DNA of 64,000 bases. Source: Salpingoeca rosetta (lineage: Eukaryota; Protista; Choanoflagellata). The stretch lies in assembly GCA_033442325.1 (NCBI GenBank), contig JAWQFM010000002.1:395841-459840 (forward strand). Reading direction: 5' to 3'. The position numbers and the translations under genes were made by a program. Below the pieces are notes generated by a model. The model saw nothing but the letters and a program-made list of their open reading frames with translations. It did not search any database and had not been told where the DNA came from. Of this stretch, positions 209 to 13,407 are shown in pieces (position 1 is the stretch's first letter; each line of letters starts with the position of its first letter).

Positions 209-2513
209 CATGTCCAGGGCCAGCCAAGCGTGCTCCTTCTGTGCCGCTGGGCAGCGGACCCACAGATCAATGCACGTGTCGCTCACAATGCGGCCCAAGC
301 ACTCAGCAGAGGCCAGCAGGCCAAAGAACCCCGTCTGCCACAGGCTTGTGGTGTAATCCAAACACTGCACAATGCGCGACTGTACACGCGGGAACACGCC
401 AGGGGGGAAAATCATCCCGTGGTGTTGCGCAATCTGCAGGCGGCGGCCAGCAAACACTTCAACAGACCCATCTTCTCCCCACAGACGCTCTGGGCGCCAC
501 TCCAGCCGCGACAGCAGCATGAAAACGCGCTCATCACCGTCACCATCACTTCCGTGCATGGCGGCGTCCTCTTCGTAACACAGCAGCATGCTGCTCAGCA
601 CGTCCACCACGAGGTCTGGATCCAACACCCGCCCAAACACGCGCTGCATCTCCGAGAACACCACACGCCCTTCCGTTGCCCGCAAGTGGACGGGGAAGTG
701 GTCCGGTGCCAGCGCTGGGCCAACCACTTTGCTCAGCAGCCAGGAAGGGGAGACGAAGATCTGGTCGGCAAGCGATGGAATGGACTGGAACCACAGAACA
801 TCTCCACGCACGTGTAGGTAGCTGAATGAGGAGGCGGTGTGGGTATGGGGGATAGTGGTGAGCATTGGTCGTAGTAGGTGTTCGCACAGCGACCACACTC
901 ACACACACTCACACACTCACACCCACACCCACACCCACAAGCACACCCACAACACATACCACACATACACTCACACACATACACACACACACCTGAGCGC
1001 CTTGCAGAAGATGTCCTCGTTCAAGCCGGGAATGCGCGCCAACTCCCCCACGTGCTCGAGGAGGAACGAAAACAGCCGGTGCAATGCCCATGGGCCTTCA
1101 TCTTCCTTTCTGCACAATGCAAGCCCCTCGCCGATCAATTCCACCACTTTGGGCACTTGAATGTCTTGCTGCACGACCTCCAGCCACGCAGCGTGAAGCA
1201 AATCGCGCAAGTGATGCATGCAGGCACCGCCCAACTCGTGGCAATTGAGAGGAATCACGTGTGGATGGATGCGCATCGTGTCACCAAACCACTCCTGCAG
1301 CTGGCGGCTCTGCAACAGCGCGTCGCCACTCGGAAACTGCATTGGCGGCAAAGAGACGCCAGAAGCATGTGGTATAGCTTCTGCTGTCGTCTCCACCAGC
1401 GTGTTGTGCTCGAGTGGTTTGTCTGCCTTGGTGCCAACAATGAACACGTGCGGTGGATGCGGTGAACGGTGCACAGCTTGGTGCAGCCGCGTCTTGATGA
1501 AGCGAAGCCAGTACAGCACAGCCTCCTCCACGTTGGCCATGTCCTTGGACAAGTCCACGCACACGACGAAGACGGCGTTGTGGTCCGCAAACAGCAGCTC
1601 GTGCACCACGTGGTACTCCGTCTGCCCAGCGAAATCATACACCCGCAGCTTGCACGACGGGAGCGTTGTCTCGTGACCGGATGAGTCTTCGGTCCCTCCT
1701 GCTGCGCCAGCTGGCGATGGTGTGAGGGAGACGCTGCCAGATGACCCGCCTCTCTTGAGTGCGAAGTTGTGCATCTCAACGCCGGGAGTACGTTGATCTG
1801 GGCGGTCGGGCTCGTCGTACGTTTTGCGACGACGGCGCACCATGGTGTTAATGACATGTGGAGACGACTGCAGCGTGTTGATGAGGGTGGTTTTGCCGAT
1901 GCCATAGTGCCCGCATACAAACACCTTGGCTGTTGAGAGCGGAACAGAGCCGTGTTCGAGGAGGGCTTTCAATTCTTGCGTGCGGGAGGCAAGCTTCCGG
2001 TTTCGCTCAAGCGCAGACTTGATGCGAGCCATAAGCTTGTCCGGCACCCACTCGGTAAAACTAAATTCGAACCACAACTACAGTGAGAGAGTGGGAGTAA
2101 GAAGAGAGGACCAAGGTGAGAACAGGGATGGTCTGGAGTCTTAGGAGCAAGTGCTATCGACGACAACAACCCTAGAACGTGCTCGTCAACGCGTGCACAC
2201 GCCCCTCAGGATGCATAGAGCACCCACACGCGCAAAGGCGTCATAAGAACAGCTTCGTCAACTACAGCCCCGATGCGGAGACACAACCACACATACAGCT
2301 CACAGCAAACACCTCTTTGGCAGAGCACTGACACCTGCAGTCCAGCACAATATCACCCAAATCGAATACCCATGCACTTTGCCATTCCACACACTCATTG
2401 GACACTGCAGCCACCACATACAGTACATAACCTTGCGTCGTCGCAGCATTGGCGAGCTGAGTTGCCATTACGCATGTAAGGGTAAACCCAAGAAGCAAGA
2501 CATGGTACATTAG

Positions 2514-2583
<70 letters not shown>

Positions 2584-2858
2584 TCAGACAAATCCTATCT
2601 GAGTTTGCAGACGACAGCTAAGGTCCCAACAGAGCGGTATATTCCTACAACACACAAAAGACACTCCTGATGGTCTTTTTTAGATCTGTGCGCGAAGATA
2701 GTAGACTTTGAGACACCAAACGGATTAGCATTGGTACATCCGCTTTACTGCAGGACCTGGCATGAGAAGATGTCGCACTGTTTAAAGTGGGGTACAAAAT
2801 AGTCAAGCCTGGGTGACTATGCCGAATATCATCGGTGGGGATACCGTGATCTATAGTA

Positions 2859-2929
<71 letters not shown>

Positions 2930-5900
2930 GGAAGGGCAGTGGTTCAGTCGAGGAAGCTGAGAGAACATACTGCAATAATGAGCACAATTCATCACATCTA
3001 GACACTTCGTTTGTCTCTCCACGTTTCAAATAGCACTCAAACCGACACGAGCACTCTCGCAGCTCCATCATTGCAATACAAACAGCCGAGTACAAGAAAA
3101 AAGGAGAAAGAAAAGATGCCGCGAAGCTTATCATACACTAAGCCACCCGTCATACACACCCAAGCCAATACCAACCCCAGAACTTGAAGCGTTGTATTGA
3201 CTGTCAGTGCCTCCGCAAAGGCCACGGCGCTCTCAGCGTAGGCCAGGCTGCGTGGTGTGGTTGTGGAGTTGTCGTAATTGTGGTGCAAGTGACCCGCAGT
3301 CAATCGCATCATAACCGCACAAACACAAACACACAAGCATCCTCGCCCACTGCCCTCCCCGCAGCCTTCATACCCCTGTCAAATAACCGCAACTAGCAGC
3401 CACGCCTGATCCTGATACAACACAGAAGTACCACCGCCCCCTCTCCTCCCACACCACAACTGTCCTTATGACACGCGCAGAAAGCGCCTCAACGTAACAT
3501 GTCTCAGTCACCAACAATGCCTCGGTGCACACAAGCACCCACACTCACTAGAGCGTTGTCAGCGTCGTGTTGACCTTCAATGCCTCCGCGATCGCCTTCC
3601 TGCCTTCGGAGCCAACATTTGTCTCCCACAAGCTTCGTAGCATCGACGAGAATTGTGTGACACAACGTAAGTCTGTAACAGATATGGCAACAGCACATCA
3701 CCCTTTTCACGCAACGTGCAACGCAGATATTCATGTCCCCACGAAAACGACAAACACAGTCATGTCACACCCAAAACACAATGCATCCCATCGCCAAAGA
3801 CAAAAGTAATGCAGTGCAGGACAGCAACATGGAACACGCGCAAACATCACACACTTCAATGTTCCCACCACACAATTTTCAGTGCCATATCACATCAAAA
3901 ACGCGAGGCCACAGCACAGACACGCATACCATCGCACCAGGCGTTGGCAAGCCACCGCAATCCTGCGCGCAAGCTAAGACGATAAAACACAGTCAGCCAA
4001 CAATACCAACAAATTACATACCCCAGTAACACGAGCGTTGTGTTCACGTTCAGTGCCTCCGCAAAGGCCACGGCGCTTTCAGTTCCAACGTCGTCATTCC
4101 CCAGGCTGCGTGTGTTGTGATGGTTGTAGCGCATGTGGTACGCCGTTAGTCCACGCATCGCATAAAGTTCAAGAACGTTGCACCGCAATCATATCCAAAC
4201 CAGCATGCATAGTACACAGCACACGAGCCCGCAACACAGTAGCTACCATACAAGCCAGCAACCACGCCTGACGTGACAGAACGAATGCCGTCACACGCAT
4301 ACAGACACCACACACCACAACTATCCAAAATCATCACACACGTACGCACATGCAGGAAATGTAGCAGCACACCTCCTTTCAACACGACACAGCACAATGT
4401 GCCTCTGCAACACGAACGCACATTCACACAAAATCACATACATTCATACTCAGGCCCGCAATGAAACAACTCACTAGAGCTCCATCAGCGTCGTGTTCAC
4501 CTTCAGTGCCTCCGCAATTGCCTTCCCACCTTCAGGTCCAAGACCGCTCCACGCCAGGCTGCATGTGGTTGTGGTATTGTTGTGGTTTGTAGTGTGGGTG
4601 TGTGCAATCTTGAGTGCATGACACATGGCATCAGACAATCCACTACCTGAGCATCGAGCGGCAAATCCCTACCCTCAACATGCGTGTTCAAAACGAACAA
4701 CTACGTCACATCCAACACTTACACACACAACACACACCCACAAAGCACAACCCTCATAGTGTGACAACATCAACCAAACTCAATCTCAGGACCTCATCAC
4801 ACACAGCCACCACTGTGCGATGACCGCAGACCCATCACAACGTATATGCACGCGCGTGATATAAACTGGTATCCTTTCACGTCTATCAAAGCAGCACGTC
4901 ACTGCCTCATCCATACCAACCATCAGAAAACCAACCACTCACACCACATCAGCAGCACGATGTGCCTCTGCCACACAAACGCATATTCACACAAAATCAC
5001 ACACATTCATACTCAGGGCCGCAACGAAACAACTCACTAGAGCTCCGTCAGCGTCGTGTTGACCTTCAATGCCTCCGCAATTGCCTTCCCGCCTTCAGGT
5101 CCAACATGGTTGCCTACCAGGCTGCATGGTGTTGTAGAACAGGTTCATTGTGGTTTGTAGTGTGGGTGTGTGTGTGCGTGTGCGTGCGTGCGTGTGATGT
5201 GGTTATCGTGTATGGGTGTGCGTGTTTGTTTGGGTGTGTGAGTATGCACATCGCATGAATTAGCTACTGTAGCCTGTTCAAAATGACTACATGAAACTTA
5301 AGGCCGAAACTCAGCATGAGCCCATTCATGTTCATTTCTTGTCATCCGCTCCGTACTCACTTGACCTGGTCGCCACACGTGTTGTTCCAAATGATGAGGA
5401 TCTTTGCTTTGAGCAATTCATCTTCGACCTTCTCCAGATACTCCCTGAACAGCGCTTCATCTGCGACACCCTCCCGCACAGGCGGTGGCGTGTCACTCCA
5501 TTGCTGTTGCTGTTGAATCATCCCCTGTTCTCCTTCGTCGCTCGCCTCAACTTTCACCTTCTCATCTGCCTGCCTTTCATCTTCGTTGTCACGCACCTCT
5601 TCTGTGCCATCCACCTTCGTATTATCCTCATTTCCCATTTCGTTCTTGCGCCACGTCCTCGCCTTGCATGCTCGCCGGAACCTGGCAATCTCTGCTGGCT
5701 TCAACTTCCTTTCTCGCATCAGCATTCCCTCATGCAGCTGTCGCACGCCCTCTGTTGGCTTGGGTTCGCTGCCCTGCTGCCCTCGCTTTTGCTGTTGTTG
5801 TCGCCGTTTTGCAAGTGCACGCGTTCTCGGATTCCGCATGGCCTCTGTTGCCTGTTCCAGCTTGTGGAGACCTGTGATGTTATGCTTCTCAAGCACCAGC

Positions 5901-6505
5901 CCCATGGAGGACAGCATGTTGTAGCGCTGCAGCCACTGTGTCAGGTCAGCGTCCAGCGTGGTTGGTAGCTGCCGTGTGATGACGGAGGAGTGACCTTTGC
6001 CGCCCTTGCCGTCGCCGTTCGAAGTGCTGATGTGGTTGAGCTTGTCTGCAATGGCTGGGGCGAGATCATGTGGTAGGGACATGGATTCTGGATCGCTTGA
6101 AGCAGGGATCCATGGAAAGTAGGAGATGGAATCGGGAAGGTGGAACTGGGCGAACTCCTCCTCAAAGTCGTCACACATCTTGATGAAGAAGAACGGCTTC
6201 TGCCTTGCCGTGATGAAGCGCAGCTCCTCATAAGTGCTGAAGGTGGACGGCGTCTTCTTCCCGTAAGTTTTGGTGCCCATGATGACAGCCAAGTCACAGG
6301 CCGCGAGAGCCGTGATGATCTCTTCTTCCATATTGCCACCAGGCTTGACGTCACACAGGAACACGTCCAAGCCGTGCACCTGCTCCAGCTCACGCTTGAG
6401 CAGCTTGCCTGCATGCCCGGCCTCTCCAAACCGCAGCGAAATGAACACCTTCTTGCGACGGCTGCGTTGGGATGCCTTCTTCCGTACCGGCTTTGGTGAG
6501 CTCAT
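209..6505 (-). CDS. TIR-(SAM-like)-LRR-ROC-COR (Roco family) protein, multi-exon, 3' end beyond the window start
   Basis: Exon 6505-5361: TIR-like (KKVFISLRF...DVFLCD...CDLAVIMGTKTYG...STYEELRFI), then a SAM-like segment and NNTCGDQV. LRR exons 5121-5038, 4558-4475, 4105-4022, 3632-3549 (84 nt each) and 3247-3176/3172. Exon 2077-993: ROC GTPase (GHYGIGKTT, RTPGV, YDFAGQ, VGTKAD). Exon 821-209: COR-like (YLHVRGDVLWF...IFVSPSWLLSKVVG). GT-AG junctions were read directly. Confidence 0.85.
2516..2927. repeat. (CA)n microsatellite interrupted by a ~280 bp unique segment (about 2582-2861)
   Basis: Pure CA runs at 2516-2581 and 2862-2927 flank non-repetitive sequence inside the Roco intron. Confidence 0.9.
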
Positions 6506-7095: not shown

Positions 7096-8993
<1,898 letters not shown>

Positions 8994-9110
8994 CTTTGCT
9001 TGTCGGCTGCTCTGTCGCTGTCGTTCACATTAGTCCTGCGCAACACCACAAAATGCAGAGAAAAAATCGTGTTTGTTCGTGTTTGTGCTGTGGGCGCCAG
9101 CCACATTCAG

Positions 9111-9122
9111 TTTCGCGCCAAA
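9111..9122. promoter_or_regulatory. Overlapping double E2F-type site TTTCGCGCCAAA in the RBMX2/RPA1 bidirectional promoter
   Basis: TTTCGCGC on + and TTTGGCGC on -, about 50 nt upstream of the RPA1 ATG at 9174. Confidence 0.6.
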
Positions 9123-9173
9123 ACACACAAGCAGCAAGCAACGCACCACCACCGGATACAGAACAAGCAGACG

Positions 9174-13407
<4,234 letters not shown>

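What the first reader, a model, noticed from the sequence alone, without database searches (positions are those of the whole stretch)
3172..5121. One-LRR-per-exon cassettes with duplicated flanking introns and changes focused on the ligand face
Seen: four exons of exactly 84 nt plus one of 72 nt, flanked by phase-2 introns (the last donor is ambiguous), so skipping or shuffling keeps the frame. There are two exon classes, A (GxEGxKAIAEALKVNTTL) and B (ESAVAFAEALxVNTTL), in the order A-A-B-A-B. Intron flanks are duplicated with the exons (4400-4474 resembles 4963-5037; 4559-4605 resembles 5122-5170). Between exons 5121-5038 and 4558-4475 I count 8 differences in the 15 nt encoding VGNHV versus AWSGL, changing all five residues, but only 4 in the other 69 nt, 3 of them synonymous. 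The intron splits a codon in the LxxLxL strand. Known: similar exon-shuffled LRR-Roco genes occur in brown algae (Ectocarpus). Inference: a diversifying recognition module, possibly varied by splicing or recombination.
Basis: partly seen in the sequence, partly recalled or inferred. Interest (0 to 1): 0.78.

Follow-up and report, generated by a model that had tools for sequence, protein, structure and literature searches.

The report
Hypervariable one-repeat-per-exon LRR sensor array
This is the sensor region of a Salpingoeca rosetta TIR-like/LRR/Roc-COR gene in which each leucine-rich repeat has its own frame-neutral 84-base exon and the changes cluster in the ligand-facing codons, a candidate immune-receptor design known from brown algae and animal NOD/NLRC genes that I could not find described for animals' closest relatives.

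Summary
On the minus strand lie four 84-nt exons and one 72-nt exon. All have AG/GT boundaries and phase-2 introns, and each encodes one ribonuclease-inhibitor-type LRR. The count for exons 5121-5038 versus 4558-4475 is exact: 8/15 differences in five codons against 4/69 elsewhere and 7/85 in the co-duplicated intron flank.

The exons belong to a gene with a TIR-like first exon, LRRs, Roc and COR. The organism is the choanoflagellate Salpingoeca rosetta, not a brown alga. Six paralogues share the architecture, and at least five further LRR-Roc arrays use the same 84-nt phase-2 exons.

In the youngest paralogue array, introns are 92-98% identical and scaffold codons 72-75/75 identical. The 9 nt for LxxLxLxxN positions 5, 7 and 8 match at only 2-7/9. 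The signalling exons are under purifying selection (dN/dS 0.16-0.30).

Best reading: a candidate intracellular receptor family whose sensor arrays change by exon duplication and diversifying selection on the concave face. Diversification by splicing or somatic recombination is possible but untested.

The design is already known from brown-algal LRR-ROCOs (72-nt exons) and human NOD/NLRC genes (one 28-aa LRR per exon). The scan had already found this design on two other stretches of the same genome (s1-435939, s1-444836).

The parts
5361..6505 (-). Exon 1: TIR-like N-terminal domain, charged linker and the start of a first LRR. It ends with two bases of a codon before GTGAGT (phase 2).
   Evidence: 382-aa ORF. 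Pfam TIR_2 E 0.0018, 19.2 bits, below the cut-off of 28. No PDB sequence match. 33 related copies in the genome.
5038..5121 (-). LRR exon, class A, 84 nt, phase 2; the only repeat with the canonical Asn.
   Evidence: Pfam LRR_6 E 2.9e-4 for the single exon.
4475..4558 (-). LRR exon, class A, 84 nt, phase 2; recent duplicate of 5121-5038 that differs in the five-codon patch.
4022..4105 (-). LRR exon, class B, 84 nt, phase 2, donor GG|GTATGT.
3549..3632 (-). LRR exon, class A, 84 nt, phase 2; AAG acceptor without the A/C-rich flank of the other cassettes.
3176..3247 (-). LRR exon, class B, 72 nt (four codons shorter), phase 2; last separate cassette.
   Evidence: Donor fixed by paralogue homology.
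4942..5172 (-). Duplicated unit 1: 51 nt of upstream intron, the exon, and about 96 nt of downstream intron.
   Evidence: Self-BLASTN match to 4604-4380, 85% over 231 nt. The repeat finder families D2 and D3.
4380..4604 (-). Duplicated unit 2, partner of 5172-4942.
993..2060 (-). Roc GTPase exon. It starts with the last, capping LRR half; both its acceptor and its donor are phase 2.
   Evidence: Pfam Roc 1.6e-9, 38.5 bits, above the cut-off of 27. P-loop, DxxGQ and TKxD motifs read. Acceptor set by homology.
209..821 (-). COR-A-like exon; the gene continues past the window start into a run of N.
   Evidence: Pfam COR-A E 0.0028 here and 6.1e-5 in the C19a paralogue, both below the cut-off. N run seen.

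Best explanation
The five exons are the ligand-sensing LRR domain of a cytosolic TIR-like/LRR/Roc-COR (ROCO) protein of Salpingoeca rosetta. It is one of seven paralogues with this architecture, inside a much larger LRR-Roc expansion.

Shown:
- Every 28-residue RI-type repeat sits on its own symmetric phase-2 exon.
- The intron splits the codon for position 5 of LxxLxLxxN, inside the beta-strand.
- Arrays differ in exon number between paralogues.
- Exon-plus-intron units are tandemly duplicated.
- After duplication, replacements pile up at positions 5, 7, 8 and 10, while scaffold codons, introns and the signalling exons stay conserved.

Inferred:
- Arrays grow, shrink and are homogenised by unequal crossing-over or gene conversion.
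- Diversifying selection on the concave face creates new binding specificities.
- Ligand binding is relayed through the Roc-COR GTPase switch to the TIR-like effector, as in an NLR in which Roc-COR takes the place of the NACHT domain.

The copy in this window is an older, more diverged array. It has lost the Asn ladder in 4 of 5 repeats and carries two B-type repeats, but it is still under constraint.
For: - Exon anatomy and phase.
- Domains: Roc above the Pfam cut-off, LRR_6, TIR_2 and COR-A below their cut-offs.
- Organism and independent splice support: the best database hit of the Roc exon is PTSG_06523 of Salpingoeca rosetta. This is the public model of the C17 paralogue, and it joins my predicted exons e3, e5, e6, e7, e8 and the Roc exon at exactly the predicted phase-2 junctions.
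- Seven TIR-like/LRR/Roc loci, all with 84-nt phase-2 LRR exons and 4 to 9 or more exons per array. Five further LRR-Roc arrays have the same structure: 38 of 38 exons are 84 nt with lead 1 and tail 2.
- C19b array: introns 92-98% identical, scaffold 72-75/75, hypervariable 9 nt only 2-7/9. 7/8 hypervariable columns vary against 59/605 intron columns, p = 9e-7. pN at the hypervariable codons is 0.47 against pS of 0.026 in the rest of the exon.
- Entropy peaks at codons 2, 3, 5 and the split codon.
- TIR-like and Roc exons among the four close paralogues: dN/dS 0.16-0.30, dS 0.39-0.58.
- The AF2 model of the paralogue's array (LRR part pLDDT about 70-84) puts the split codon and codon 2 inside the beta-strands. 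The array matches RI-like proteins, NOD2, RI and NLRPs by sequence and by fold.
Against: - No expression, isoform or binding data are available, so the immune-receptor role is inference by analogy.
- The TIR and COR assignments are below the Pfam cut-offs, and exon 1 has no PDB sequence match.
- The array in this window has lost the canonical Asn in 4 of 5 repeats and has one weak AAG acceptor. This could mean relaxed constraint on this particular copy.
- pN/pS inside the hypervariable codons is unreliable because there are few, saturated sites. No codon-model test such as PAML was run.
- The strongest signal comes from paralogues, not from this locus.
- Arrays in two paralogues are interrupted by N runs, so their exon counts are lower bounds.
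Confidence: 0.78

Rival explanations
1. Diversity is produced mainly at the RNA level. Because every intron from exon 1 to the Roc exon is phase 2, any subset of cassettes can be skipped in frame, giving a set of isoforms with different LRR numbers and surfaces, as reported for brown-algal ROCOs and human NLRP3.
For: - All cassettes are frame-neutral.
- The public model of the C17 paralogue omits an open, AG/GT-flanked, phase-2, 84-nt LRR-like candidate exon at C17:486658-486741.
- The cassette at 3632-3549 has a weak AAG acceptor.
- LRR exon skipping is documented in Ectocarpus ROCOs (PMC11378527) and NLRP3 (PMC6642158).
Against: No transcript data were available. A gene-model omission may be a prediction choice, or the candidate may be a decayed exon. 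Frame symmetry is also the expected by-product of exon duplication and needs no splicing function.
Confidence: 0.3
2. The clustered differences are templated. Short gene-conversion tracts copy the five-codon patch from other cassettes, giving a mosaic as in chicken Ig or a VLR-like donor library, rather than point substitutions fixed by selection.
For: - Within-array homogenisation shows that conversion or unequal exchange does operate.
- The 21-nt helix segment of the B-class exons is closer to the large subtelomeric family (18/21) than to the class A exons (14/21).
Against: - Neither 21-nt patch of exons 5121-5038 or 4558-4475 has another copy in the 55-Mb assembly at up to 3 mismatches.
- All BLASTN and pattern hits of the cassette lie inside intact paralogous genes, apart from one unexamined 1-mismatch pattern hit at C8:1658233; no array of unlinked silent donor cassettes was found.
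- All cassettes are proper exons with splice sites.
Confidence: 0.08
3. The locus is a decaying duplicate. The loss of the Asn ladder, the truncated 72-nt exon and the patchy differences reflect relaxed constraint, not adaptive diversification.
For: Asn is kept in 1 of 5 repeats. One exon is shortened by four codons. One acceptor is weak.
Against: - All five exons are open with intact AG/GT.
- Scaffold codons show pN/pS of 0.33 within the array.
- The TIR-like and Roc exons of this copy show dN/dS of 0.18-0.30 against the paralogues, with no stops.
- Differences are non-uniform (p = 3e-5), which neutral decay does not predict.
Confidence: 0.1

Closest known systems
Brown-algal exon-shuffled LRR-ROCO genes (Ectocarpus, Saccharina; PMC3341825, PMC11378527)
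   Same: LRR followed by Roc-COR. One LRR per exon. All cassette introns in phase 2. Tandem exon duplication. Positively selected or hypervariable sites on the concave face. Proposed role as immune receptors.
   Different: The exons there are 72 bp and encode 23-24-aa repeats, not 84 bp and 28-aa RI-type repeats. No N-terminal TIR-like domain is reported for the brown-algal genes. The lineage is different (stramenopile versus holozoan), so the resemblance is probably convergent. Alternative splicing is documented there and untested here.
Human NOD/NLRC LRR exon organisation (PMC6642158)
   Same: RI-type LRR. One 28-aa repeat per frame-preserving exon, with the exon border at a fixed place inside the beta-strand. 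By sequence and fold the paralogue's array matches NOD2, NLRX1, NLRPs and RI.
   Different: The switch domain here is Roc-COR, not NACHT, and the effector is TIR-like rather than CARD or PYD. I did not compare the exact intron position or phase with animal genes, so common descent of the exon module is open.
Ribonuclease inhibitor (RNH1) and NLRP A/B repeat pairs
   Same: Two alternating repeat subtypes (A and B), growth by exon duplication, and the same fold class.
   Different: In RI and NLRP each 171-bp exon holds an A+B pair of 28 and 29 aa. Here A and B are on separate exons, both are based on 28 aa, and the order is A-A-B-A-B.
Lamprey VLR cassette assembly
   Same: Short LRR cassettes with variable concave residues.
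   Different: VLR uses somatic gene conversion from silent flanking cassettes. Here the cassettes are ordinary spliced exons, and no array of silent donor cassettes was found for this clade.

Membership tests
ROCO proteins | Roc (Ras-of-complex) GTPase domain | tested here: met
   Pfam PF08477, 38.5 bits against a cut-off of 27, E 1.6e-9, on window 2077-974. P-loop, DxxGQ and TKxD motifs are visible in the ORF.
ROCO proteins | COR domain directly after Roc | tested here: inconclusive
   COR-A E 0.0028 (18 bits) on window 820-210 and 6.1e-5 (23.4 bits) in the C19a paralogue. Both are below the cut-off of 35.3. COR-B was not seen; the gene runs into N.
RI-type (LRR_6) leucine-rich repeats | 28-29-residue repeat LxxLxLxxNxIGxxGaxxLaxaLxxNxx forming a beta-strand/helix horseshoe | tested here: met
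   Single exons hit LRR_6 at E 2.9e-4 to 0.15. The consensus of 38 exons fits the motif. The paralogue model P0001 carries PF13516 and matches RI-like proteins at 3e-37, NOD2 at 1e-17 and RI at 6.5e-17. AF2 gives alternating strand and helix, with Foldseek hits to RI-type LRR proteins.
Brown-algal exon-shuffled LRR-ROCO | One LRR per exon, phase-2 introns | tested here: met
Brown-algal exon-shuffled LRR-ROCO | 72-bp exon encoding a 23-24-aa repeat | tested here: not met
   78 exons of 84 nt were collected. The only 72-nt exon here is a shortened 84-nt type.
Brown-algal exon-shuffled LRR-ROCO | Variable or positively selected sites confined to the concave face | tested here: met
   Entropy and variable-column tests. 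Strand positions. No codon-model test was run.
Brown-algal exon-shuffled LRR-ROCO | Alternative splicing of LRR exons | not testable with these tools
   No transcript data. The only lead is the candidate exon that PTSG_06523 omits.
Animal NLR (NOD/NLRC) receptors | NACHT/STAND ATPase between effector domain and LRR | tested here: not met
   The only NACHT hit is a P-loop fragment, E 0.015, inside the Roc exon. The domain order here is TIR-like, LRR, Roc.
TIR-domain proteins | TIR fold, with a catalytic Glu if an NADase | tested here: inconclusive
   TIR_2 E 0.0018, 19.2 bits, below the cut-off of 28. No PDB sequence hit. Exon 1 was not folded here; it belongs to a separate finding (s1-443199).
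VLR-like somatic cassette assembly | Silent donor cassettes without splice sites flanking an incomplete gene | tested here: not met
   All matches but one (an unexamined pattern hit at C8:1658233) are spliced exons inside complete genes. The hypervariable patches have no second copy.

The most novel reading that the evidence does not exclude
The LRR-Roc arrays, mostly near contig ends, act as contingency loci. Ongoing mitotic unequal exchange between near-identical exon-intron units, together with regulated skipping of frame-neutral cassettes, would give clonal or cell-to-cell variation in receptor surfaces. That would be a repertoire-generating immune system in the closest unicellular relatives of animals. 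The 84-nt RI-type exon module would then be homologous to that of animal NOD/NLRC genes.
Probability: 0.12. Interest if true: 0.85.

Novelty: new variant of a known kind. Interest (0 to 1): 0.55.

Why it matters
Choanoflagellates are the reference outgroup for reconstructing the origin of animal immunity. Four full-text searches found no paper describing their ROCO or LRR repertoires in this way.

S. rosetta carries dozens of arrays built from the same 84-nt, one-RI-LRR-per-exon module that human NOD/NLRC genes use. Their hypervariability is confined to the concave face, and they are attached to a Roc-COR switch and a TIR-like domain.

Two conclusions are possible. Either the modular LRR exon predates animals, or three lineages (brown algae, choanoflagellates, animals) converged on the same way of evolving receptors. 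S. rosetta is genetically tractable, so the receptor hypothesis can be tested directly.

Tried and rejected
- VLR-like donor library: rejected. BLASTN of the exon-plus-flank unit and a degenerate pattern found copies almost only inside the four close paralogous genes; the one exception, a 1-mismatch pattern hit at C8:1658233, was not examined.
- Templated micro-conversion of the five-codon patch: no second copy at up to 3 of 21 mismatches.
- Pseudogene decay: rejected on open frames, intact splice sites and dN/dS of 0.16-0.33.
- Simple tandem duplication of a whole 563-bp unit in this window: rejected. Similarity covers only the exon and about 50-100 nt of flank on each side; intron interiors are unrelated.
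- A-B pair duplication: not shown. The introns between exons 3-4 and 5-6 share nothing beyond the exon flanks.
- Origin of the B-class exons from the large 'AVALAEML' family: inconclusive. 18/21 against 14/21 nt in one segment, but overall identity is highest to the own clade.
- Local pN/pS inside the hypervariable codons was uninformative because of few, saturated sites.
- PDB sequence search of exon 1 gave nothing.
- Single-sequence AF2 of the paralogue model was confident only in the LRR part.
- The stretch just before the window start (C2:388403-395840) reads N, so the 3' end of the gene could not be read.
Exons were searched one by one by reference. The fold and the PDB comparison used the public protein of a paralogue (P0001).

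Full report
WHAT IS THERE

The finding lies on the minus strand of a eukaryotic gene.

- Four exons of exactly 84 nt: 5121-5038, 4558-4475, 4105-4022, 3632-3549.
- One exon of 72 nt: 3247-3176.
- Each is bounded by AG and GT. Each begins with the last base of a split codon and ends with two bases, so every intron is phase 2.
- The translations are ribonuclease-inhibitor-type leucine-rich repeats. Pfam LRR_6 hits single exons at E 2.9e-4 to 0.15.

Upstream lies a 382-aa first exon (6505-5361). It has a weak TIR_2 match and ends in phase 2. Downstream lie a Roc GTPase exon (2060-993, Pfam Roc above its cut-off) and a COR-A-like exon (821-209). The gene then runs into a block of N at the window start.

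In the paralogues the Roc exon starts after a ...CAACAG acceptor, in phase 2. The homologous AG here is at 2062-2061, which pairs with the donor 3176|3175. All six introns from exon 1 to the Roc/COR junction are therefore phase 2.

Exons 5121-5038 and 4558-4475 differ at 12 positions.

| Region | Differences |
|---|---|
| 15 nt of codons 2-6 (all five residues change) | 8/15 |
| Rest of the exon (3 synonymous) | 4/69 |
| Co-duplicated downstream intron flank | 7/85 |
| Co-duplicated upstream intron flank | 2/14 |

The patch is 53% diverged against 6-8% around it. Fisher p = 3e-5. The hypergeometric p is 0.004 after allowing for all 70 possible windows.

The duplicated units are 5172-4942 with 4604-4380, and, for class B, 4139-4006 with 3284-3160. 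Intron interiors are unrelated.

WHOSE GENE

- The window is G000:C2:395841-459840 of a 55.4-Mb assembly in 68 contigs.
- The best database relative of the Roc exon is PTSG_06523 of Salpingoeca rosetta, 83% identical.
- That protein is the public model of a paralogue on contig C17. It contains my predicted C17 exons e3, e5, e6, e7, e8 and the Roc exon, joined at exactly the phase-2 junctions I had predicted from sequence alone.
- This is independent support for the exon model. It shows that the organism is a choanoflagellate, not a brown alga.

THE FAMILY

The first exon and the Roc exon each detect the same six other loci.

| Group | Loci | Identity to this gene |
|---|---|---|
| Close paralogues | C19:106-110 kb, C19:338-345 kb, C17:478-490 kb | 75-85% aa |
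| Distant paralogues | C1:485-491 kb, C29:21-27 kb, C26:763-767 kb | 34-63% aa |

In all seven loci the region between the two domains is an array of 84-nt phase-2 exons. I count 5, 4, at least 6, at least 8, 9, about 6 and 5 exons. Two arrays are interrupted by N runs.

A profile of 38 exon peptides finds at least 150 scored single-repeat matches (380 candidates) across the genome. I opened five further arrays next to Roc domains. All 38 of their exons are 84 nt with one leading and two trailing bases, and their introns are about 185-210 nt. The exon design is therefore old and general in this genome's LRR-Roc genes.

WHERE THE VARIATION SITS

The clearest case is the C19:339-344 kb array.

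- Flanking introns are 92-98% identical.
- The 75 scaffold positions of the exon are 72-75/75 identical.
- The 9 nt of the split codon plus codons 2 and 3 agree at only 2-7 of 9.
- Seven of 8 hypervariable columns vary, against 59 of 605 intron columns (p = 9e-7) and 3 of 76 in the rest of the exon.
- pN at the hypervariable codons is 0.47, against pS of 0.026 in the rest of the exon.

Over the 21 exons of the four close paralogues, residue entropy is 3.2 and 3.5 bits at codons 2 and 3, and 2.3 bits at codon 5 and at the split codon. It is at most 1.8 bits elsewhere.

In the motif LxxLxLxxNxL these are positions 7, 8, 10 and 5. A single-sequence AlphaFold model of PTSG_06523 is confident in the LRR part (pLDDT about 70-84). 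It places the split codon and codon 2 inside the beta-strands. The array matches RI-like proteins, NOD2, RI, NLRX1 and NLRPs by sequence and by fold. From established LRR structure, these positions line the concave, ligand-binding face.

The signalling exons behave oppositely. Among the four close paralogues dN/dS is 0.16-0.30, with dS of 0.39-0.58. Cassettes within an array are much younger than the genes (pS 0.026 against dS of about 0.45). They cluster by gene, not by position. This points to repeated tandem duplication or homogenisation after the genes separated.

HOW IT MOST LIKELY WORKS

- Shown: a modular, frame-neutral exon design; differing cassette numbers; duplicated exon-intron units; substitutions focused on the concave face; conserved scaffold and signalling domains.
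- Inferred: unequal crossing-over or gene conversion changes and homogenises the arrays, diversifying selection fixes new surface residues, and the protein acts as an intracellular sensor coupling LRR binding to a Roc-COR switch and a TIR-like effector.
- The array in this window is an older, more derived example. It has lost the Asn ladder in four repeats, carries two B-type repeats, has one shortened exon and has one AAG acceptor. It is still constrained (scaffold pN/pS 0.33).

RIVALS

- Splicing-based diversification is allowed by the design. One lead hints at it: an open phase-2 LRR-like exon that the public C17 model omits. No transcripts could be examined.
- Templated patch conversion and a VLR-like donor library are unlikely. 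The two patches have no second copy at up to 3 of 21 mismatches, and almost all cassette matches lie in intact genes; one pattern hit at C8:1658233 was not examined.
- Neutral decay is contradicted by the non-uniform pattern and by the dN/dS values.

COMPARISON WITH WHAT IS KNOWN

- Brown-algal LRR-ROCO genes have one LRR per 72-bp phase-2 exon, exon shuffling, concave-face positive selection and alternative splicing (PMC3341825; PMC11378527).
- In human NLRs the exon border lies at a fixed point in the beta-sheet. Most NOD and NLRC genes encode one 28-aa LRR per exon (PMC6642158).
- TIR-containing ROCOs have been noted in a broad survey (PMC11378527).
- Four full-text searches found no description of this system in choanoflagellates.

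I therefore class it as a new variant of a known kind. Two earlier follow-ups of this scan, on other stretches of the same genome, reached the same reading. I saw them only after my own analysis, and my tests agree with them.

LIMITS

- No codon-model test, no transcript data and no second choanoflagellate genome were available.
- Exon counts in two arrays are lower bounds because of N runs.

Noticed in passing
G000 genome-wide; e.g. L052 (C34:11001-18000), L053 (C28:970001-977000), L054 (C25:49001-56000), L055 (C27:1039001-1046000), L056 (C2:31001-38000): A large second clade of LRR-Roc genes (scaffold 'GAVALAEMLKHNTT') has arrays of 3 to 11 84-nt phase-2 exons with introns of about 190 nt. 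It shows the same hypervariable codons 2 and 3. At least 150 single-LRR matches were scored genome-wide.
   Followed up: partly
G000 contig ends (positions, contig lengths): By my count 24 of 38 LRR-exon arrays lie within 100 kb of a contig end. That zone is at most 24.5% of the genome (binomial p = 5e-7), a subtelomere-like distribution typical of fast-evolving contingency families. Contig ends were not checked for telomere repeats.
   Followed up: partly
L023:6658-6741 (C17:486658-486741, + strand): An open, AG/GT-flanked, phase-2, 84-nt LRR-like candidate exon lies between two exons used by the public model PTSG_06523, but the model leaves it out. It is either a skipped cassette exon or a decaying one.
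   Followed up: partly
C19:342084-343098 and C17:480731-485904 (in L020, L023); C2:388403-395840 (L016): N runs sit inside two paralogous LRR arrays and directly before the window start. The two C17 exons on either side of the 5-kb run are identical.
   Followed up: no
window 5122-5172, 4559-4605, 4106-4139, 3248-3284; same flanks in L020 and L023: Cassettes of the four close paralogues have an unusual A/C-rich acceptor flank (...ACAACCACA..GCAG) in place of a pyrimidine tract, and a conserved GTGAGTTG donor. Both are conserved between loci about as well as the exons are. Distant paralogues and the Roc and COR exons have ordinary pyrimidine tracts. This could be a shared splicing-control element or just co-conversion.
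   Followed up: no
L054 (C25:51243-53040): The exon types 'LKSSRIGP..' and 'LDNNDIGS..' alternate three to four times, each with its own acceptor flank. This indicates tandem duplication of a two-exon unit.
   Followed up: no
window 4083-4063 and 3233-3213 (class B exons): The 21-nt helix segment of the B-class exons matches the large subtelomeric family at 18/21, against 14/21 for the class A exons of the same gene. This may be a mosaic or conversion trace, but the segment is too short to decide.
   Followed up: partly
window 2506-2591, 2852-2929, 1-100, 8000-8300: Long (GT)n/(CA)n microsatellites lie in the 1.1-kb intron between the last cassette and the Roc exon and elsewhere. A 100-N scaffold gap at about 8061-8160 is flanked by (CA)n and (GA)n runs.
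   Followed up: no
window about 7096-8860 (-) and about 9000-13000 (+): Neighbouring genes, read from ORF translations only: an RRM-like exon followed by an Arg/Ser/Lys-rich tail on the minus strand, and a multi-exon gene on the plus strand whose exons look like replication protein A large subunit.
   Followed up: no
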